Assembly (NCBI RefSeq): GCF_032062105.1
Contig: NW_026918357.1
Location: 62,001 to 126,000 of the forward strand
Origin: Saccostrea cucullata
Lineage: Eukaryota
Reading direction: 5' to 3'
DNA length: 64,000 nt
The notes under the pieces were generated by a model. The model did not search any database, was not told the DNA's origin, and saw nothing but the letters and a program-made list of their open reading frames with translations. The position numbers were made by a program, and so were the translations under genes. Numbering within the stretch: position 1 is the stretch's first letter; each line of letters begins with the position of its first letter. Below, one piece after another: positions 26,138-64,000 of this stretch.

Positions 26138-29100
26138 CTAATCACGTGAGACGTCAAAAATAGGATCCCCATCTGGTGTACGGACCCATCTTCTGGTCTG
26201 AGTGTCAGGGTCTTCTTCGTACACCCAGCCTGTAACTGTAGAACGACAATAATATAAACAAATATATGTAACTGTAGAACAATAATAATGTAAACAAATA
26301 TATGTAACTGTAAAACAATAATAATGTAAACCAAACCTGTAATGATAAAACGATAATGATATAAACCCAGCCTGTAACTGTAAAACGATAATAATATAGA
26401 CCCAGTCTGTAACTGTTAAACGATAATGATGTAGACCCAGCCTGTAACTGTAGAACGACAATAATATAAACAAATATATGTAACTGTAGAACAATAATAA
26501 TATAGACCCAGTCTGTAACTGTAAAACGATAATAATATACACCCAGACTGTAACTGTAAAACGATAATAATATAGACCCAGTCTGTAACTGTTAACGATA
26601 ATAATGTAGACTCAGCATGTAACTGTAAAACGATAATAATGTAGACCCAGCATGTAACTGTTTAACGATAATAATGTAGACCCAGCATGTAACTGTAAAA
26701 CGATAAAAATAAAGACCCAGTCTGTAACTGTTAAACGATAATAATGTAGACCCAGGCTGTAGCTGTAAAAAGATATTAATGTAGACCCAGTCTGTAACTC
26801 TAAAACGATAATAATATAGACCCAGTTTGTAATTGTAAAATTATAATAATATAGACCTAGACTGTAACTGTATGACGATAACAATACAGACCCAGACTGT
26901 AACTTTAAGTCTGTAACTGTAAAACTATAATAATATAGACCCAGTCTGTAAATGTCAAACAATAATATAATGGACCAATTTAAGCCAGTATGTTTTAGAC
27001 CTAAACAAATTAATTAAAATAGAAAAAATATATTTAGCATATACGAATTTATAACTTTTATTTTATTTCAAGTGTAATACATAACTCATTACAAATATGT
27101 GAACTAAGACTATTGCACTAGGAAGGAATATACTTATTCGCTTCACAGTATAAACGATATTTAAAAACTATTTTTACCTATTTTTATCATTTATGTATTT
27201 ATTATATACAACAAAATTGAAACACAATATGTTTATGAAACGCTGATGGTCCTGTATAACAACCCGAGGTCAAGGTTAAAGTTTTTAAAATGTAGGTAAC
27301 ACTCAAAGGTCAAGAGTTCATACAGTGTTTAAATATTGAAACCGAATGAAAGAACCTGAAACACGAAATACATGTAAAGTAAAAAAAGAAAGAAAACATT
27401 AACTATTCGAAAGTTTCGGGCAAGGTCAACGAGAACAAACATATAAAAAGACAATCATAAGTATATTCAGACAGACATGTAGAATCCCCCATCCCTTCCA
27501 AAAAAAGAAACAAATCTTCAATTTATGGGGCATAAAAATCATTATCTTTTGGGTGAAAAAAGAATGAATTATAATTGGTAACTTAAACACACGAGTCTCA
27601 AACATCTGCGGGAGTACAACACTTTTTGAATTTAATGTCAACCATTGTTGAAACGAGATCCTACATTAATTTTGTTCCCCTTTAACATGTTTAACACATT
27701 TACGTAGACCTTAAATTGTTAACTTATAACAGATTTGAAATTCTTCAGTAATTTATATATAAAGTAATTTTTTTGCGGGAGGGGGGGGGGGACATCTAGT
27801 AAATTCTTTTACATGTACACGACAGCAAAGTCATTTTTTAAGTCCTTAGACGTCTACATCTATGTTGGACTCACTTTTTATTATTCCCTTAAATTACGTC
27901 TTTGTAATAACATAATTTAAGTTTTCTTGTATGCTATGTATAAAAACTTTGATATATCATTTGACATCAGTTTACAGGTTATTTTACGTATGTCTCCCTA
28001 CAAAAATATAAATTTTAATAATTTTTATATTTGAAAGATAAAATAAACGGTTTCCCTTCTATGCATAAAATCATAAAATATGAAGTTATCTGACATTTAA
28101 GACCACCAAAACTCACCAAAATCTCGCTTTCTGTGTGCATTAAAAAGAGCTGGTTTAGTAGGAAGGGGTGTTGAGGAATTTGACATCGTGTTACCGAGGA
28201 GAGAGGGACTTAAAGTGACGCTTTTGAAATCCTGTCTAGAAGATAAGACAGATGGGTCGGGGGATGACCTATCAAAACCTGGCTTCGCTGATGATGGAAC
28301 ATTTATCAAAGGACCATCAAATGCCTCTACTTTCTCAACGTCATGTAGCTTGGAATCTGTGAAATGAAAAAAAAATCTCAAAATATATTACAAATTGAAA
28401 ACGCAAAGAATGATAAATTTTCTTTCTTCGTCTTTAAATCGATAAAAAAAAAGTTCTTGACACAAATATGACCATGTTTTTCCTTCTTTTTTTGAGATGA
28501 TTTTTTGAAGAATCGCGCATAAAAAGTAAAGATTATTGCTTGCGAAAAACATTACATTTCAAAAAATAAAAACAAAGAACCAGGTAATAATTTCATGGAA
28601 ATTTAAGGCAATGCTTAGGTCATATTGCTTTGATTTATTTTTTTTTAAATTCTGTATTAAACGTTTTAATAAATTCAAATTATATGAATAAAATATAATT
28701 TTGAATATACAAAGAAATTTTTGAAAGCGAAAACAAATTGATACCTGAAAGTTGGAGAGGGGTTACAACTGAAACGGTTGTCGTTGTTGTTTTGGTGGTT
28801 GGGTTTTTGTTGTGAGTTGTCTCGCTTTCCTCGTCAATAGACAGTCGTCCACCTTTTCCTCTGATCTCAATTATCTGAACTCTGGGCCTCTTTGTGGTTT
28901 CATTGTCTCTATCAGATAGAAAATAAGGAAAACAAATACAGATTATGAAAACTTTGAAAAAAGACAGTGATCATATTTTCATCATCGTCATCATCATCAT
29001 CATCATCATTGTTTCTGAGGTGAAAGTATAGTAGCACATTTAATGATCCTCATCTTTCATTCCAATGGCTTATAAAAGATATGACACATTTTCATTCATT

Positions 29101-32100
29101 ATCATCATTCATCAGCTATTATAAGTATTAGGAATGCTCACTTTTTCTTTCTACGTAATTTCCTTCTCCAGACCAAGTAAAAAATAATAATAGCTGCTAA
29201 AACAGCTAGAAGAAGTCCAAAAAATATCCCAAGAATCAATCCCAAGTCGTCCTTCTCCTCTGGTGCTGTTACCTTTTCGGGCGCAGGGAAGATGAGTTTG
29301 TCTCCAAATGGAACAACTTTTTCTATTCTATATTTATCCCATGATTTTTCTACAAGATTTATTGACCTGAATAGTACAACCGTAGGAAAAAACTGTTCTA
29401 TAAAATGAAAAGGCTAAGCTAAGAAAATCTTCTCTTTTCTCATTTCAGTGCATTTACCGTTTACGATTACAGTTGAGAAGAATAGTACTACACTATGAAA
29501 AACTGTTCTATAAAACAAAACGGCTACACAAAGAAAATCTTCAATGTATTTACCGTTTACGATTACAGTTGGGATTTCACTAGGATTAAGTTGAAGGAGG
29601 TTAATGAATTCCCCATTTGTAACGAACTTTTTCTCTTTCTGCAAATTGTTTATGTTTTCTGTTATATCATTTTTAACAGCATAAACATGTACAAGAACTG
29701 ATCTGAAATAAAAATATAAAAATAATTTAGAAAATATGCATCTTTTTCCTTGTTACTTCACTAATCTTGAAAGCAATATATTTTGTGAATGATGACAATG
29801 AGAAAAAAATTAAAACATGTAATAAAATTACAGCAATATTAATATAACAGGTCGGGTGATCTGTTCAAACTAAATTTAACTATAGCTGAATGCCGTTTTA
29901 TTTTTTATAGCAAATATAGAAAGTTTGATTCAAATTCATCTTCACTCTAGATTAATTTTATTTTGTAAAAAGACAATGAACATTCGAATTTCAAACAAGT
30001 GATATTAGTTTCAGTGTAATTTTTTCTAAATATTAAAAACATGCTTGGAAGATTTGAAGAACATGACAAATAATTAATTTGAAATAATAGTGAAATCGTT
30101 TACTTTACAAAGTAAAAAACACATTGCAACACCGTTGTAAACTATACAGCTGTAGTAAACATCAACCATTACTAATGATAGTATTTTTAAGTAAACGATT
30201 AAAACTATTTTATCAATTAATAAACAATTACCTGACTTTATCCTCTACACACCACTTTCTAACATATGCTGTTGGAAAAGACGCCCTCAGTACCTCCTTT
30301 ATGTGATTTAATAGTTCCTCCTCAACGGATAAATAGGATACCAAAGTTAAGTCGAGGTAAAATGAGATGACAGTGTCTTCAGGGTCAAATCTATCTATTC
30401 TAACGATGGCATTCTTTAAGGACTTCAACTGAGGGTCTCCTTTATCTGAGGATATTATTTCTATCGTATATTTAGCTTTTTGGAGCTCTGCATTTGCTTT
30501 GATTATTCCTACAAAAGACATTGTTTTAACACATTTTAATTGTCCTTCAATATTAAAAATACTATACAAAAGATAATAATAAAAAGCGTTTTAGTTGTTT
30601 ATTTACCGGAATCATCGACCACGAATGGTCCAGGATTATCAGCAAGAAGACTATAGGTAACAAGGGCATTACTTCCTATGTCACTGTCTACAGCAGTAAC
30701 TACAGTTATAGAAGCATCACAATAATCGTTCAAAGACGCTTCTGAATTGTAAAAATCAGGAGAGAACTGTGGTCTGTTATCATTGACATCTTGGACAAAT
30801 ATGGTCACATTTACTTTCGAAGACAGAGGGGGCAATCCACTATCCCTTGCTATAATGGTGAAAGTAAAACTGTCGTATGTTTCTCTATCCAAGCGCTCTC
30901 TTAGAATAATATCACCAGAATAGGATCGCACGCCGAAGAACGAATCAAAAGGCGTCCCTAGCTGTGTAGTAAAATCTATTTCATACTTGATTTCTCCATT
31001 CAGGCCTTCATCCGAGTCTACAGCTCCAGTAGATAAGACTTTGCTTCCTCTGTCAAGGTTTTCTAACACGTATACAGAATATTCTTTTTGTCCAAACATT
31101 GGTGTATGGTCATTTATATCTTCTATTGTGACGTTCACAGTGACCTCCGCAGACCAGTGGGGAGATCCGCCATCTTGAACTCGGATCCACAATAAAAACT
31201 CTGATTCTAACTCACGATCAAAATCTCCAACTGTATAGATTTCCCCTGAAGTGTCATTAATACCGAACATGCCTGAGGCACCTTTCCAGTTGGTAGCTAT
31301 GCTATATCTTAGCTTGGAATTTATGCCATCATCATTATCGGTCGCTTTGATCAAGGCAAACACTGTTGGAGAAACTGTGTGCTCTTTGACTGAGAAAATA
31401 TAAGAAGACATTTCGAAAACTGGATATTCATCATTGACGTCAATAATATTAATAGTGGCCGTTACAGATGTGGATTTTGATGGAATTCCACTATCGGTAA
31501 CCTGAATAACTAACTCATACTTGTCTAAACGCTCCCGATCCAAGTCTGATGCCACCTGTAAGATTCCATTGTGAGAATCTAGTTTGAAACTAGAGTACAA
31601 ATTCCCCGATAATATAGTATAGTTAAAATTTTCATCGTAATTGTCATCAATATCATTGACAGTAAAAGTAAATATTATTGTTTCTTTCAAAACATTTTCG
31701 GGAACAGTAGCATCATAGGTTCCGATGAAGAGTGGAGCATTGTCGTTAACATCAGTGAGAAAAATCTCGAGTGTAAAAAAGCCTTTTAAGGAAGGGGTTC
31801 CTCTATCCACTGCAGTTATCAACATGTCGTATCTTCAACAAAGGAAATAATATTAAAAGACTTTACGGTATTTAAAGTTTAAGCAAACACACAAAAATGT
31901 AGTTGAAGTATGGTTACCTGCTTGTTGTTTCTCTGTCAAGCGAATTTTTAACAGTCACAATGCCGCTGTCGGGATCAATTTGAAAAGGGACCGCAGAGTT
32001 TGATACAAATGTAAACTTATTGTTGCCGTTTAAGGATGAGTCGGCATCTGTAGCAAACACCTGAATCACAGATAGTCCAACCAAGGCGTCTTCTGAAATC

Positions 32101-35100
32101 CATTTTCGTATGGAAGAGGAAGAGAATTCTGGTGGGTTGTCGTTGACATCTATAATGTTTATTGTGACTGTACAGACTTCAAATGTTGAAGGGAAACCTT
32201 GGTCCGTAACTTGGATTACTAGAACAACAGACTTGGCGTTTTCAAAATCGGGTGGGGATGCAACACTGATTTCACCAGTTGTTGGGTCTATTTGAAAGTA
32301 AGAGTCTTCATTTCCTGAGAGTATGGTGTGACGGAGTAACCCATTTGTTCCGCCTGTATCTGCATCAATAGCAGAGACTGTTCCTACACTGTAACCAGCA
32401 AGTGTGTTTTCTGCGACGGAGAATCTGAAAATTAAATTTAATTCACAGATACGAAATTTAGTAGAAATGTTACAAAAAAGACCTTAGTGAAATATCTATC
32501 GTTCATCAATATTTTAAGAAATCTCAAGGAGTGTTTTTTTTCTTCATGATGGATTTGGCAGAAGAACCAGTCAATATTGTAATTGTTGTAAATTGAATAA
32601 ACAGGGTTACTTTTTTAGTACGTAGCACGAAGAGCAAATAATGATATAGAAATTTATTTATAAAACCTACACATAATTTTTTTTGCTGAATCTTGGACGT
32701 TCATTAACGTCAGTTACAGTGATTTGCACCGTTGCGGTTGATGATTTAGTACCATCCGAAGCCACGATGTCTAATTCATAGTAAGAAGTTTTTTCTCTGT
32801 CCAATGGTTTAGTCAGGATGACTTCTCCACTCCTAGAATCCAGTAAGAACTCCGAATAAGTCGTTCGGAAGGAGTAGATAAAAGGATCATTATCAGGATC
32901 CTCGGCCGTTACGGTGGCTATGACAGTTCCTGTATCTGTATCCTCTCTGAAGAATTTTGGTATATCTAGAAAAATATGCATTTAAATGTTGACTCAATAT
33001 GATTGTATATTTTTTTTAAATGAGGCTAATTCTAATGCAAAGTATTTTGCTTTTTGCCTCAACTACAAGATAGATAATGTTTTTATTTGATCGTACTTCG
33101 ACATTCATACAATACATGCATACACAGTAGAATAGCAATTCAATTGTTAAATTATGCAAACCTGGGTGTATAAATTTGGGTGGTCCCTCGTTTTCATTTA
33201 TGACGTTTACTGCGACTCTAACTTTTGTTGTGTAATAGCCATCTCTGATGCTTATTTCTATATTGTAGAATTGCGTTGTCTCATAATCCAAGTTCCCTGG
33301 TATGAAAAAACAATTCATAAAAAGGTATATAGATTATGGATATTAAATTACTTCTTAATATCGATCATTTTATACAAATTTTGTAGAGCTACATGTACAC
33401 GTCTTTATTAGTCAGCCTAGTTATCTCCTAAAAATAGCAGCTAAATTCAGATGCTTAACTAACCAGGGGATGCTTCATTTTGAACACATTCAAGGAAAAC
33501 ATGTTTTACAGAAAGATTCAATAATGTTCGTCTGGACAATAAAAATAAAAGTAGAACGAATACACGATGCAATTACATTTTAACTTGCAAAAGTTTATTA
33601 ACCATAATTATTGTTTCATTAAAATGACTAAAAGTTTTTGCCTGTATCTAAGTCAGTAGAATAAATGAAATTAAATTCACATAAAAATTGCCTTTAATCG
33701 TGAGCTGTCCCGAGGTTCCCTCAAATGCATTGTCACTGGGAATCTGGTTGACGGAATAAGAAAGGTCATCAAGATCTCGATCAGAGCATCCAAAGTTTGG
33801 AATAATCACACTGCCTTTTCCTGTATACAAAAGACATCAAGATGATTACAAAACTAATAAATCTTTCTATAAAAAAAATTAAAGACAAAAATGTATCATT
33901 TTTTCCGTAAAGGTATGTGTTTTTCTTCTTATTTTGAATAAATAAGTCATTCCATGATATTTTATTTCAGGAGATATTTGTTTTGCATAAAAACGGTACG
34001 TGTGTAAAAATATTATCTGCATTAGTCTTACTTGTCAGTTCGGATATCCTGACATTAAAGACAGTTTTTGGACAATAGGGGGCGTTGTCATTGACATTCT
34101 GTACCGACACCGTGACGGTTCCGGTCCCCTGGAATTAAACAGAGTTCAATTGCAACATAGGTATGGATATTTTTTTCTTCTAGTTTTTGCATTTCTATTC
34201 ATAACCATGGGTTTGTTTTCAAGTAAAACTAGAATTTAAAAAAAACAATGTACAAGTTGCAAATCAAACAAATACAAACCCATAGTCACAATTATACATA
34301 AAATGAATCATATTTTGGACGAATTATAATGTAAATGGTTTATTGTCATGGATTGGGTTTCCCCAAAATATAATTATATGTTTTATATTGGATAAACTGT
34401 GTTTCATCCCCAGGTGTAAACAATGTATTCATGGATATCCAGTTTTATAATTTTGACAGAGTTCTAGCTAAATCCATTCATATTTTAATCGCGTAACATC
34501 CAAACATCAATTATAGATTAAACAAAAGTATTGAAATAATCAAAACTTCATCATAAGCACACCTGAAACATTTAACTTTTAATGAGAACATGGTGAATAG
34601 ATTAAACTTGATCTGTAAACAGATGAAACATTATCACGCGAATCGCATTGTACCTTTGAGGTTCCTCCATCGTCCGCCGCCACAATTATCCTGTACAGCG
34701 GGACCGTTTCAAAATCTAAATAGTGCGTTAGGTATATTTTACCAGTCACACTGTCCATCATAAAGGCGTCTATTGCAGTATTTTGTACTGGAAGACAAGA
34801 ACACTTAATCTTGCAATTAATTCAAGTTCCTTTGTAGTATCTATGACTGACAAAGCCACAATCATTTTAGTAACATTAAAAAATGTTACATTAAAAAAGG
34901 TATAAATATTAACCTTTTTTGTAAATATATTTTCTCAATCACAATCACAATGTCCGTGTCTTAACATTTTACTCGACAATATTTCAAATGAAAGTACATT
35001 TACCTGACACTATTTCAAAAGAGAGTACATTGTCGGGATAAGCGTCGCGGTCAGAGGCGGTCAATGATGCGATCTCTGTACCAGGTGTTGTATCCTCTCT

Positions 35101-38100: not shown

Positions 38101-40807
38101 ATTTCTGTTCATCGGTCTGACATTGACTACAAAGCCGATTAACATCCCATTTACAGCCAAGGTTTTATTTTCATGTTGAACACTGTAAAAAGACACACAT
38201 TATACAAATCAGCAACTCTGCAAGCAAGTAAAAAAAGTCCAAAAACTCCACATAATACTACACAAAAGTCCGAAATGACACCTGCAGCTCTTAATGGACT
38301 CTTACGAGGAGGGCTGACTTTTACAGTAAAATTTACGGCTTAATTTTACACCAGGGCTATCTCCAGAAGCTCTTTCACGAAACAAATATTTAGCTCAACA
38401 TTTAGTTTAACGAAAATGATGGTTTATTTCGAAACACAAATAAGTTTCCTTGAGGAAAACGACAACCACCCTAACCTCAACTCCCGGCCTTCACAGCTTA
38501 ATCCCAATAACACCATGCCTATTTGCATTAGAAAGATTTCCTCATTTATTATTAATTATGTATCTCTGTTTAAATGTCAAAGTAAACCGTCAACTGTAAA
38601 AGTTAATGCTTCTAGCAAAAGCCCAATTATTATAATAAATAGAAAGTCCTATCTTTATATAAAGTAACGAAACAAACAGAAAATATTTTGTTTTAGTAAG
38701 TCTGAATTTATCAAATTTAATACGCCTTATAGGACATTTTCGTGATTGACCAGCAGCAAAAACTCAACTGCAAAAAATCGATCGGGTCAAAGCAAAAAAG
38801 TAAAAAGAACGAAGTCGGGATTATGTATCCTCGCAAACCGTCACACCGGCCATTTGGTCCTTGTTATGATCGGACAATCGGAAAACTTATAATATTTCAT
38901 GTGAAAATAATGTCTCAACAATTTGTAGGGAAAATATCTATCATTATTGAATAATATGTTTTTGCTTACAATGATATTTTATCGACCATAGAGTCAGCTA
39001 AATGTTGACTAAACACGGGCAATATTTATTGAAGATGACAACCATCACTATTAAAGCTTAAAGTCTATCTAAACATTGTAAATAAAATGTTGAGTGAACA
39101 CTGATCTATTGATAAAAGAGATCAAATTCTATGGAGATGTAAGGATCCTCAAAACCAATAAATTCTAAAAAATAAATATGCCTAAATAAATAAATATAAA
39201 GAGTAACAAATACGAACCTAACAATGAATACATAACGCTTTTTATCCACAAAGTCTAATGGTCCGGATACTGAAATTATTCCATCAGCTGGATTTATATC
39301 GAATTTTCCTGGGCCTGCTCCGAAGAATTTATACACAATTGCATGACCATCCTTATCCACGGCATTCACGTCATAGATAACGGTTCCTGTTGTTGCGTTC
39401 TCATCCACAAATACAGTGACGTCGCGCGGATAAACAGTAGGGTCGGCTGCTAAAACACCTTAATTAAATACAATTTTTAAATGCATTCCTATTGTATAAT
39501 CATAACACTCAAATAAGCATTTCCAAAATTGCTTTGTTTAAAAAAATTCTGATTGTACATGTTGTATGTATACACGTCAAGTTCTCTGAAGTTGATGTTA
39601 ACAGATGCTTGGGTTTCTGATTGACAATATCTAATCAAGCAATAATATGGATTTTGGAGACCAGGTCTTTCAACAATCTATTAAAATTTCCATGCATAAA
39701 AAATTGCGCCCCGTTATTTGCAGACCTATTTTTTTATTTATATGAAGCAGAATTTGTCCAATTTTTTTTTTTACATGAAAAGAAGAAACACTTTCTGTGG
39801 CCTTCAACTCGACATTTAGATTTATGGACGACGTATTGTCAATATATAATAGTTCCATTCTAATGTACGTGAACACGATAATCCTCGTTAGATTGAGATA
39901 AAAGATACCACAGAGTCTGACACATCATTCTGTTTCATATTTAGATCTTTTACTGGATAATGACATTAATTGTTATCGTACAACAAAACTTTGACATCAA
40001 TATTTGTTATCTCACAACAACACTTTTAAGAAATAAATCGTGATGACTGTCTTTTCAATCGTCAACTTCCCTTACTTATGCAGCATTGTGTACCTTTGTC
40101 ACCTGCATACGGATTTTATATGTCTTAGTTGTACTGTAGAGTGTGTTCTCCTTAAGAACAATTTTTAAAACGATTTAAGTTAATGACAAACAAATTGATG
40201 AAGCAAGAATATCAACAATCATAATTTTTTTGAAAGGCATGTTTGATGGAGTTTTGAGCTCGAATACTGTTTGTTATCTCCGCATATTTCATGCCTTTCG
40301 TTATCTACTCATATTTGTCATATTTTGTCTATGCTTCTTCTCTGTTGCCCTCCCTGCCCCCCCCCCCCCCCCTCCTCAAGATCTCCATTTGATATTGTAT
40401 TTAAATTTCTTGACTATTTTTCTGCGTTAGAGATATAGAAACAATTCAATTGCAGTCTGATAGGATATGATATATAATTGTATTTAGTATATATTTGCCT
40501 CGGTCAATATCGATATTTTTCTGGAGAATAACAAACCATATTAAAACACCAAAAGAGTCCATAATTATATGTTATTATACTTGTATTTATTTATTGACTG
40601 GAATGCTTGGATATCCAATATAAAATTTGCTCAACTTAACTACAAACTTATTATTGATAAATGAGGTATATGCGTATAATTTAGTCTTAAAATTAACTTT
40701 AAAAGGGTCATTTTTAATTGAATCGGATTCAAATGAAATATATTTTACTTACTTGTTGCAGCGGATAACAAAGCCAAAAGGACAATAGTGAAATTATTAT
40801 GAGGCAT
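26138..40807 (-). CDS. Non-classical cadherin (protocadherin Fat4-like/CDH23-like type): signal peptide, 13 EC repeats, membrane-adjacent domain, TM, cytoplasmic tail; 21 coding exons
   Basis: Exon 1 40807-40753 (MPHNNFTIVLLALLSAAT), then approx. 39458-39218, 38182-38043, 37518-37205, 36706-36610, 36184-35943, 35474-35360, 35246-35004, 34787-34654, 34129-34033, 33820-33692 (GC donor), 33296-33162, 32965-32671, 32424-31918, 31832-30607, 30508-30232, 29702-29554, 29349-29142 (TM LGLILGIFFGLLLAVLAAIIIFYLVW-RRK), 28908-28745, 28356-28117, 26229-26138 (WVYEEDPDTQTRRWVRTPDGDPIFDVSRD*). LDRE/LDYE, DxD and DxNDN motifs recur throughout. Confidence 0.92.
26222..26950 (-). repeat. 31-bp minisatellite (~23 units) comprising the cadherin last-exon 3' splice site
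   Basis: Minus-strand unit ATTATTATCGTTTTACAGTTACAG|RCTGGGTCTAY. The last unit runs directly into the terminal exon. Confidence 0.9.
39560..40210 (+). mobile_element. Penelope-like retroelement RT fragment (decayed)
   Basis: NCAPLFADLFFYLYEAEF, degenerate FRYIDDVLSI, EIKDTTES..SYLDL. Confidence 0.75.
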
Positions 40808-63300: not shown

Positions 63301-64000
63301 ACCTTGCCCACAAAAGTTGATCCAGTAAATGACATTTTGGTCACTAGAGGGCTCTCACATATGGTTTTTCCAACCTGGGCAGCATTGTTACGGGAACTGG
63401 TAACAACATTGAGCACACCTGCTGGAATTCCAGCCTCCTTGGCCAACTGTAAGAAATATACAAAGCTGTCAAAGAGGTCTATATATATGTTAATAATTTT
63501 TTTTTCGAATTATTCCTCTACTTGATCGACGTTATTATTGTATCAGTCCAATATGCCAGTCCATTTTCTTTCTCTTACTGAACAAGTGATCATAATGATT
63601 ACCATAATCTGGTGAAAAGGTAGAATTCATATGGCTGATTTATATGTATATTAGATAATTACATCATCAACTGCATACGACAGGAGACCCAGAACAGGTC
63701 AGATGTTAAATAACTGGTTCCCTTACTTAACATCAAAGAAAGCCAGTGCTGAATACAGCATGTAAATTGGTTCCCCTGCTTACATCACACAGCCAGTGCA
63801 GAGAACCAGAGCAGGTCAGATGTTAACTGGTTCCCCTACTTACATCACAGAGGGCCACCAGTTCTAAGTACGGCATTTTAACTGGTTCCCGTACTTACAT
63901 CACAGAGAGCCAGTGCTGAGTACGGCATTTTAACTGATTCCCCTACTTACATCACAGAGGGCCAGTGCTGAGTATGGTGTGTCCTCTGCTGGTTTCAGTA
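60321..64000 (-). CDS. ALDH5A1: Succinate-semialdehyde dehydrogenase, mitochondrial (3' portion; 5' exons outside window)
   Basis: Exons >64000-63951 ([16 protein letters not shown]), 63446-63303 ([10 protein letters not shown]), 63063-62920 ([24 protein letters not shown]), 62569-62411 (TCVCANR), 61974-61811 (EEIFGP), 61359-61301, 60529-60321 ([29 protein letters not shown]). These are SSADH-typical ALDH motifs. Confidence 0.93.
60553..61200. mobile_element. Short-TIR body + palindrome element filling the last SSADH intron
   Basis: TIR TATATTATTTTT / AAAAATAATATA (60553, ~61059). CTGATTGG at 60584. Perfect 33+1+33 palindrome at 61103-61169 with looser outer arms. Confidence 0.7.
63655..63975 (-). 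repeat. ~52-68-bp tandem repeat (~6 units) containing an SSADH exon end and 5' splice site
   Basis: Unit ..TACTCAGCACTGGCYCTCTGTGAT|GTAAGTAGGGGAACCAGTTA, with decay increasing into the intron. Confidence 0.88.

What the first reader, a model, noticed from the sequence alone, without database searches (positions are those of the whole stretch)
26222..26950. Splice-junction-anchored minisatellite: ~23 copies of the cadherin terminal-exon acceptor
Seen: the 31-bp unit is the last ~22 nt of the intron (..TTTTACAGTTACAG) plus the first ~9 nt of the exon (GCTGGGTGT-like), amplified into the intron. Only the final copy continues into the coding exon GWVYEEDPDTQTRRW.., which fits in phase 1 to the perfect donor TTTTG|GTGAGT at 28117. 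Inference: the spliceosome must pass about 40 decoy CAGs, so copy number could tune C-terminal isoforms. The same junction-anchored amplification occurs twice more in this window (29370-29570 and 63655-63975). That suggests a recurrent mutational process tied to splice junctions, such as splicing/R-loop-linked or RNA-templated repair, rather than random slippage.
Basis: partly seen in the sequence, partly recalled or inferred. Interest (0 to 1): 0.8.

Follow-up and report, generated by a model that had tools for sequence, protein, structure and literature searches.

The report
Minisatellite copied from a splice acceptor
In the hooded oyster, a 35-base stretch spanning the last intron/exon boundary of a Fat-like cadherin gene has been copied about 21 times into the intron, leaving a row of look-alike splice sites; it mirrors minisatellites known in human genes (F7, CBS) and is most likely a neutral by-product of tandem duplication.

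Summary
Window 26220-26965 (minus strand) carries a minisatellite of 35-bp units (not 31) in about 21 copies (not 23), with 31 CAGs (not about 40).

The genome is Saccostrea cucullata. The gene is RefSeq XP_062602216.1, "protocadherin Fat 4-like". Its last coding exon is real. The encoded peptide VTGWVYEEDP..RRW..TPDGDPIF is the best-conserved part of the cytoplasmic tail in four oyster species and one paralogue.

Each unit is therefore 19 nt of intron plus 16 nt of exon.

The orthologous junctions in S. echinata and Ostrea edulis are single-copy. The unit occurs nowhere else in the 1.17-Gb assembly. The array therefore arose in the S. cucullata lineage from the junction itself.

The proposed junction-targeted mutational process is not supported. 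In six control cadherin genes, 2 arrays span a junction against 2.2 expected by chance.

No RNA reads could be obtained, so use of the decoy sites is untested.

Junction-spanning minisatellites are already known on the donor side (human F7, CBS, LMNB2, PDGF). Other unchecked scan notes report the same pattern elsewhere in this genome.

The parts
28117..28356 (-). Penultimate coding exon of the Fat-like protocadherin. It ends ...RKRDF + G (phase 1), with donor GT at 28116-28115.
   Evidence: Exact mapping of RefSeq protein P0087 onto the window; sequence.
26236..28116 (-). Last intron, 1881 nt. Its 3' 730 nt are the minisatellite. It also holds a fragment of a dispersed repeat at about 27271-27314.
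   Evidence: dispersed repeat.
26220..26965 (-). 35-bp minisatellite of about 21 units. Minus-strand consensus: TTACAGRCTGGGTCTAYATTATTATCGTTTTACAG. The last unit runs 16 nt into the exon. Three units (at 26272, 26308, 26484) carry a variant that has lost the CTGGGT part.
   Evidence: TRF; unit parsing; pattern search; self-BLAST.
26236..26237 (-). AG of the annotated, authentic acceptor (ctacag|TTACAGG).
   Evidence: The same junction is present in S. echinata and O. edulis.
26230..26231 (-). Second in-frame AG, 6 nt downstream. Using it would delete the conserved residues V-T.
   Evidence: Sequence; V-T-G invariant in 4 species; PWM score 8.3 against 7.5 for the annotated site.
26141..26235 (-). 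Terminal coding exon, encoding (V)TGWVYEEDPDTQTRRWVRTPDGDPIFDVSRD. The stop codon is at 26138-26140.
26211..26218 (-). Purine-rich GAAGAAGA, 18-25 nt into the exon. It follows only the authentic acceptor, and the decoys are followed by TATATTATTAT. It is inferred to act as an exonic splicing enhancer.
   Evidence: Sequence. The GAAGAAGA stretch is also present in S. echinata and O. edulis. The enhancer role is an inference and was not tested.
29369..29574 (-). Tandem duplication, about 96 bp x 2. Each copy holds the last 19-21 nt of an exon, the donor (AACG|GTAAAT) and most of the short intron. It is absent at the S. echinata orthologous intron.
34968..35031 (-). Tandem duplication, 31 bp x 2.1. 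Each copy holds the last 27 nt of an exon plus GTAA of the donor at 35004.
   Evidence: TRF; sequence; exon map.
63655..63975 (-). About 5 tandem copies of the last 22 or so nt of an SSADH (ALDH5A1-like) exon (..YSALALCD) plus GTAAGT and about 28 nt of intron. The authentic donor follows 63951.

Best explanation
This is a locus-specific minisatellite that arose in the Saccostrea cucullata lineage. A 35-bp segment straddling the last intron/exon boundary of a Fat-like protocadherin gene (19 nt of intron 3' end plus the first 16 nt of the exon) was duplicated in tandem. It then expanded to about 21 units, presumably by replication slippage or unequal exchange.

All extra copies lie upstream of the retained exon, so they are simply part of the intron. 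They add about 16 pseudo-acceptors that look as good as the real one.

By inference, the authentic exon-proximal acceptor stays in use because only it is followed by the conserved exon, with its GAAGAAGA purine run and the conserved C-terminal peptide. Most decoys would shift the frame and lose that peptide.

The array is best read as a tolerated, probably neutral or slightly costly by-product of tandem duplication. Duplications that include exon sequence survive only when they straddle a junction, because the extra copy is then spliced out.

Shown: the anatomy, the lineage-specific origin from the junction, and that the exon is real. Inferred: the slippage mechanism, exclusive use of the last acceptor, and neutrality.
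For: - Array anatomy.
- Gene and junction: the public RefSeq protein XP_062602216.1 (P0087) maps exactly onto 19 exons, the last at 26141-26235.
- The exon is old. VTGWV.E..P....R.W..TP.G...F is invariant in S. cucullata, S. echinata, O. edulis and C. virginica, while the rest of the tail is 30-40% identical. A similar motif ends the S. cucullata paralogue P0190.
- Orthologous junctions are single-copy: S. echinata ...tctttaacag|TTACAGGTTGGGT and O. edulis ...ttgtacag|TTACAGGATGGGT, with no TRF array nearby.
- The unit is not a dispersed element. With up to 3 mismatches it hits only this array in 1.17 Gb, 12 of 12 hits. The one related locus is a 600-bp fragment copied from here.
- Decoys resemble real sites. 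With a 51-site oyster acceptor matrix, 16 array AGs score in the interquartile range of real acceptors or above (7.2-11.9) against 7.5 for the true site.
- The frequency fits chance: 2 junction-spanning arrays observed against 2.2 expected in six control genes.
- Precedent: minisatellites whose first monomer spans an exon-intron boundary in human F7, CBS, LAMIN B2 and PDGF, with mostly only the exon-proximal site used (PMC1557585). Tandem repeats at exon-intron boundaries are also described in human genes (PMC2812944).
Against: - There is no transcript evidence for which AG is used. The exon junction rests on RefSeq models and conservation.
- Within this one gene all three tandem duplications span a junction (nominal p about 0.007), and SSADH nearby has a fourth. 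That is more than the neutral model predicts locally.
- Neutrality and the enhancer role of GAAGAAGA are untested.
Confidence: 0.78

Rival explanations
1. A junction-targeted mutational process. Under this view, tandem duplications in S. cucullata arise preferentially at exon-intron boundaries, for example through transcription- or splicing-coupled breaks, R-loops or RNA-templated repair.
For: - In this gene, 3 of 3 tandem duplications span a junction against 0.5-0.7 expected.
- A fourth lies in SSADH in the same window.
- Two of them are absent from S. echinata.
- Other first-stage notes report the same pattern in several other windows of this genome. Those notes are unchecked and come from the same kind of reader.
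Against: - Unflagged control genes show no excess. The S. cucullata paralogues P0190 and P0155 have 0 of 8 (expected 0.47). All six controls together have 2 of 46 (expected 2.2).
- The window was selected because of the pattern, so its p-value is post hoc.
- A rough estimate of mine from this window's array density and assumed junction numbers (not a tool count) gives thousands of junction-spanning arrays genome-wide by chance, about 0.3 per 64-kb window.
- The units are contiguous genomic intron-exon sequence with no spliced signature, so nothing points to an RNA template.
- The control sample is small. An enrichment of up to about 3-fold is not excluded.
Confidence: 0.1
2. A functional splice-site ladder. 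Under this view, the decoy acceptors are used, and array length tunes the ratio of C-terminal isoforms or the efficiency of last-intron removal.
For: - The decoys are as strong as the authentic site by PWM.
- Two decoys (26307 and 26553) stay in frame and keep the conserved C-terminus.
- The minus strand of the consensus unit contains no stop trinucleotide. I estimate by hand about a 6% chance of this for such an AT-rich unit.
- In human CBS, two pseudo-sites of such a minisatellite are used (PMC1557585).
Against: - RefSeq gives a single protein for the gene with no isoform label.
- 14 of the 16 strong decoys shift the frame or stop early and lose the most conserved peptide of the tail.
- The array is absent from S. 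echinata and O. edulis, which make the same C-terminus without it.
- In F7, LMNB2 and PDGF only the authentic site is used.
Confidence: 0.08
3. The exon was recruited from a pre-existing satellite or transposon. Under this view the array came first and its last CAG was exonised.
For: The array and exon share 16 nt, and direction cannot be read from S. cucullata alone.
Against: - The exon start V-T-G-W-V-Y and its acceptor exist without any array in S. echinata and O. edulis, and in the paralogue P0190.
- The unit is found nowhere else in the genome.
Confidence: 0.02
4. An assembly artefact, that is, a collapsed or expanded repeat or chimeric reads.
For: The assembly is fragmented (23,869 contigs). 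Minisatellite copy number is often mis-assembled.
Against: - The units differ from each other (83% match) in a structured way, including three variant units and a repeated multi-unit block.
- An independent diverged copy with about 5 units sits on another contig.
Confidence: 0.02

Closest known systems
Human F7 IVS7 37-bp VNTR, and the similar minisatellites in CBS IVS13, LAMIN B2 and PDGF intron 4 (PMC1557585)
   Same: - A minisatellite of 35-100-bp monomers whose exon-proximal monomer spans an exon-intron boundary.
- The authentic splice site is reiterated many times in the intron.
- The monomer size (37 vs 35 bp) and copy number (5-20 vs about 21) are similar.
- The SSADH array at 63655-63975 in this window is a direct donor-side counterpart.
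   Different: - The cadherin array is on the acceptor side. The last monomer spans the intron-exon boundary and the decoys lie upstream.
- The 5'->3' scanning rule shown for F7 donors cannot be carried over directly.
- Use of the sites and copy-number polymorphism are untested here.
Internal tandem repeats at exon-intron boundaries of human segmental-duplication genes (PMC2812944); introns from tandem arrays (Zhuo et al. 2007, known to me only from that paper's reference list)
   Same: Tandem repeats overlap exon-intron boundaries and carry splice sites in each unit.
   Different: Those cases create new introns or variable exons. Here the intron is old (same position in three oyster genera) and is only lengthened.
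Intron gain or sliding by tandem duplication (Drosophila, PMC2891723; potato RdRp, PMC4974935)
   Same: The same raw mutation: a tandem duplication that includes a splice signal.
   Different: No new intron or shifted boundary results here. The authentic junction is kept.
Tandem alternative acceptors (NAGNAG-type)
   Same: Two in-frame AGs lie 6 nt apart at the exon start (26236 and 26230).
   Different: The spacing is 6 nt rather than 3. The pair is ancient coding sequence (Thr-Gly codons) found in all oysters examined, not a product of the array. Alternative use is untested.

Membership tests
Minisatellite with a terminal monomer spanning an exon-intron boundary (F7 IVS7 type) | Head-to-tail array of 10-100-bp monomers inside an intron | tested here: met
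   TRF: period 35, 19.5 copies, 83% match. Unit parsing gives about 21 units.
Minisatellite with a terminal monomer spanning an exon-intron boundary (F7 IVS7 type) | The exon-proximal monomer contains the authentic splice junction, with exon and intron parts | tested here: met
   Exact mapping of RefSeq protein P0087 puts the exon start at 26235, and the array runs to 26220. The junction is conserved in orthologues.
Minisatellite with a terminal monomer spanning an exon-intron boundary (F7 IVS7 type) | Reiterated pseudo-sites identical or nearly identical to the authentic site | tested here: met
   16 array AGs score 7.2-11.9 against 7.5 for the authentic site, using a 51-site acceptor matrix.
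Minisatellite with a terminal monomer spanning an exon-intron boundary (F7 IVS7 type) | Only, or mainly, the exon-proximal site is used in vivo | not testable with these tools
Only the RefSeq model is available.
Minisatellite with a terminal monomer spanning an exon-intron boundary (F7 IVS7 type) | Copy-number polymorphism among individuals (VNTR) | not tested
   Only one assembly was available.
Dispersed satellite or transposon-borne minisatellite | The same unit at many genomic loci | tested here: not met
   All 12 pattern hits in 1.17 Gb lie in this array. The DNA search found only one other locus, a fragment copied from here.
Intron gain by tandem duplication | An intron absent at that position in relatives | tested here: not met
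   The same intron position and phase occur in S. echinata and O. edulis.
Cadherin superfamily (host gene) | Cadherin repeats above the Pfam threshold | tested here: met
   PF00028, 218 bits, 4 repeats in the 408-aa exon.

The most novel reading that the evidence does not exclude
S. cucullata, and perhaps oysters generally, may have a raised rate of tandem duplication at exon-intron junctions that is coupled to transcription or splicing. In that case 'splice-site ladders' would be a systematic genomic feature rather than the chance tail of abundant tandem duplication. The local excess (3 of 3 in this gene, a fourth nearby) and the many unchecked notes of the same pattern elsewhere in this genome leave this open. 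My six-gene control sample only bounds the enrichment at roughly 3-fold or less.
Probability: 0.1. Interest if true: 0.7.

Novelty: new member of a known kind. Interest (0 to 1): 0.3.

Why it matters
Junction-spanning minisatellites are natural experiments in splice-site choice. The human F7 case was used to show 5'->3' scanning for donors. An acceptor-side array offers about 16 equally good pseudo-acceptors in front of a strongly conserved terminal exon, and the same window holds donor-side ladders. Together they would be a ready-made system for asking how the 3' splice site nearest the exon is chosen in a mollusc. Beyond that the locus is ordinary. It does not show a new mutational mechanism, and there is no sign that it regulates the cadherin.

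Tried and rejected
- Short-fragment protein search. A search with the last 122 residues of the RefSeq protein for transcript-derived fragments found only genomic ORFs that read through the donor.
- Exon reality from the paralogous fragment on C11096. The exon is 92% identical and the adjacent 3' flank about 89% (my count from the alignment). There is no clear coding signal. The copy has a 1-nt frameshift and no cadherin within 20 kb upstream.
- Pfam on the terminal peptide found nothing meaningful.
- A short match of the unit in S. echinata (L020 35210-35237) looks like chance.
- C. virginica locus. The protein is not on record for DNA look-up.
- Zhuo et al. 2007 is not held in the library.
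- The exonisation-from-satellite and assembly-artefact readings were rejected (see the rivals).
- I did not search a spliced model of my own. The joined protein I used is the public RefSeq sequence that the search returned.

Full report
**1. What is there**

TRF finds one strong array at 26223-26908: period 35, 19.5 copies, 83% matches, score 797. I parsed the minus strand at the recurring GTTACA anchor. This gives 20 full units of 34-36 bp, a truncated 14-bp one, and one further 5'-most unit that the anchor missed, reaching about 26965. Self-BLAST gives 26220-26976.

The degenerate unit pattern, with up to 3 mismatches, hits 13 times in the window and never in 100 shuffles. The array is real. 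Its period is 35, not 31, and it has about 21 copies, not 23.

**2. The gene and the exon**

The minus strand carries a cadherin gene. A 408-aa exon scores 218 bits for PF00028. A full-library search with that exon returned one protein that is this gene's own public model. It is XP_062602216.1, "protocadherin Fat 4-like [Saccostrea cucullata]", 1591 aa.

I mapped that protein exactly onto the window and obtained 19 coding exons. The last exon is 26141-26235, with the stop codon at 26138-26140.

The protein therefore reads ...RKRDF-VTG-WVYEEDPDTQTRRWVRTPDGDPIFDVSRD.

I did not search a spliced model of my own. The joined sequence used throughout is the public one that the tool returned.

**3. 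The exon is old and constrained**

A search restricted to the C-terminal 377 residues found orthologues in S. echinata, Ostrea edulis and Crassostrea virginica. In the alignment the cytoplasmic tail is poorly conserved (31-41% identity to the two distant species). The terminal-exon peptide is the exception. V-T-G-W-V, E, P, R, W, T-P, G and F are invariant in all four. The S. cucullata paralogue P0190 ends with a similar motif, DPVTGWVYVE..RRW..P.KDPLF.

Each unit is therefore the last 19 nt of the intron plus the first 16 nt of the exon.

**4. Direction and age of the event**

I fetched the orthologous loci. In S. echinata the last intron is about 640 bp. It ends ...tctttaacag|TTACAGGTTGGGT with no repeat there. 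In O. edulis the intron is about 615 bp and ends ...ttgtacag|TTACAGGATGGGT, again single-copy.

The 35-bp unit, with up to 3 mismatches, occurs 12 times in the 1.17-Gb assembly, and all 12 are in this array. So the exon and its acceptor came first. The array was seeded from the junction in the S. cucullata lineage and is not a dispersed satellite or transposon.

One related locus exists, at G000:C11096:331090-331659. It holds about 5 units, the exon with a 1-nt deletion, and about 410 bp of 3' flank. Identity near the exon is 88-92%. There is no cadherin within 20 kb upstream. This is a later partial copy of the locus already carrying the array.

The first three bases of the units (CTA in most, GTA in one) resemble the GTA that follows the last unit in the exon. 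That is a small microhomology, consistent with slippage-type duplication. This point is an inference.

**5. The decoys**

The array holds 37 AG and 31 CAG. I built a position matrix from the other 50 of the 51 acceptors of the three orthologous genes. Real sites have quartile scores of 7.1, 8.9 and 10.8.

Only the decoys at 26307 (+72 nt) and 26553 (+318 nt) stay in frame through to the conserved C-terminus. The others end in unrelated tails.

What sets the true site apart is what follows it. It is followed by the conserved codons, including a GAAGAAGA run at 26211-26218. That run is also present in S. echinata and O. edulis. The decoys are followed by TATATTATTAT. I infer, but could not test, that exon definition through this purine-rich element and the downstream end of the gene favours the exon-proximal acceptor.

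A search for short transcript-derived protein fragments found only genomic ORFs that read through the donor.

**6. "It happens again in this window"**

This is true. There are four junction-spanning duplications, not three.
- 29369-29574 is a duplication of about 96 bp that contains the last 19-21 nt of an exon, the donor AACG|GTAAAT and most of the intron. The S. echinata intron there is single-copy.
- 63655-63975 is five copies of the end of an SSADH exon (..[15 protein letters not shown]) plus GTAAGT and about 28 nt of intron. The exon was confirmed by reading beyond the window end.
- 34968-35031 is a 31-bp x 2.1 repeat made of the last 27 nt of an exon plus GTAA at donor 35004.

**7. Is that more than chance?**

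I used a neutral model. One unit per array is placed at random within the gene. Wholly exonic placements are discarded, and an overlap of at least 4 nt on each side of a junction is required.

Under this model the three cadherin events have probabilities of 0.14, 0.12 and 0.41. The product is 0.007. That figure is post hoc, because the window was flagged for this pattern.

For an unflagged sample I took two S. cucullata paralogues (P0190 on C20187 and P0155 on C7051). I added three S. echinata genes and the O. edulis orthologue, mapped their RefSeq proteins exactly, and called arrays with TRF plus self-BLAST.

| Gene set | Arrays | Spanning a junction | Expected |
|---|---|---|---|
| S. cucullata paralogues (P0190, P0155) | 8 | 0 | 0.47 |
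| S. echinata (three genes) | 36 | 2 | 1.70 |
| O. edulis orthologue | 2 | 0 | 0.04 |
| All six controls | 46 | 2 | 2.2 |

One of the two S. echinata cases is itself an acceptor ladder. It has about 9 units of about 47 bp, each carrying ...ttctgtag plus the first 25-30 nt of a cadherin exon (L029 11725-12220).

So junction-spanning arrays occur in oysters at about the rate expected. These genomes are rich in tandem duplications, and these genes are dense in junctions (36 junctions in 7.2 kb of intron here). The sample is small, so an enrichment of up to about 3-fold cannot be excluded.

Other first-stage notes report the same pattern in several other windows of this genome. They are unchecked and come from the same kind of reader, so I treat them as a lead only.

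A simple filter explains why exon fragments are seen repeated only at junctions. A duplication inside an exon breaks the frame and is lost. One that straddles a junction puts the extra copy in the intron and is tolerated.

**8. What is known**

The human F7 gene has a 37-bp VNTR in intron 7 whose first monomer spans the exon 7 donor. The pseudo-sites are functional but silent, because the most upstream site is selected.

The same paper lists further genes with minisatellites whose first monomer spans an exon-intron boundary. CBS has 15-20 monomers with two pseudo-sites used. LAMIN B2 has 10-15 monomers of 100 bp. PDGF has 16-18 monomers of 81 bp (PMC1557585).

Tandem repeats at exon-intron boundaries have also been surveyed in human segmental-duplication genes (PMC2812944). 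Tandem duplication is an accepted route to intron gain or sliding (PMC2891723 and PMC4974935).

I found no paper on this in oysters, and none describing an acceptor-side array of this size. My searches were few.

**9. Verdict**

The origin from the junction is now shown by comparison with two other oyster genera. The functional and mechanistic readings are not supported. The array is a new acceptor-side member of a known kind of junction-spanning minisatellite, and it sits in a window that also holds donor-side examples.

Noticed in passing
window 34968-35031: A fourth junction-spanning tandem duplication in the cadherin gene. It is 31 bp x 2.1 and holds the last 27 nt of the exon plus GTAA of the donor at 35004.
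   Followed up: yes
L002 1501-2060 (G000:C11096:331090-331659): A stand-alone partial copy of the locus: about 5 array units, the terminal exon with a 1-nt deletion (frameshift) and a shifted stop, and about 410 bp of 3' flank. Identity is 88-92% near the exon. There is no cadherin within 20 kb upstream. Its left break lies inside an array unit.
   Followed up: partly
L029 11725-12220 (S. echinata, paralogue P0187): An independent acceptor ladder in a related species. About 9 units of about 47 bp each carry ...ttctgtag plus the first 25-30 nt of a cadherin-repeat exon, and the last unit continues into the exon.
   Followed up: partly
L020 33385-33429 (S. echinata orthologue): A 21-bp x 2.1 duplication spanning the acceptor of the penultimate exon. 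The upstream copy has AAAG instead of ACAG.
   Followed up: no
window about 27271-27314: A 44-bp core inside the last intron matches 40 or more other contigs at 91-93% identity. This is a fragment of a dispersed repeat (MITE or SINE-like).
   Followed up: no
window 39106-39408 (minus strand): A cadherin-like ORF lies upstream of the first exon of the RefSeq model, which starts at 38145. The S. echinata orthologue is 110 aa longer. The S. cucullata model may be truncated at its N-terminus.
   Followed up: no
G000:C20187 (P0190), between the exons ending ...DMKT and starting INKDKW: The RefSeq protein has three residues (NLR) that need a micro-exon of about 9 nt. My exact mapper could not place it.
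   Followed up: no
window 29414-29644 (minus strand): Reading from the first to the second copy of the duplicated donor is open and in frame. It would add 32 mostly hydrophobic residues just before the transmembrane segment, as another first-stage note says. The RefSeq model uses the first donor.
   Followed up: partly
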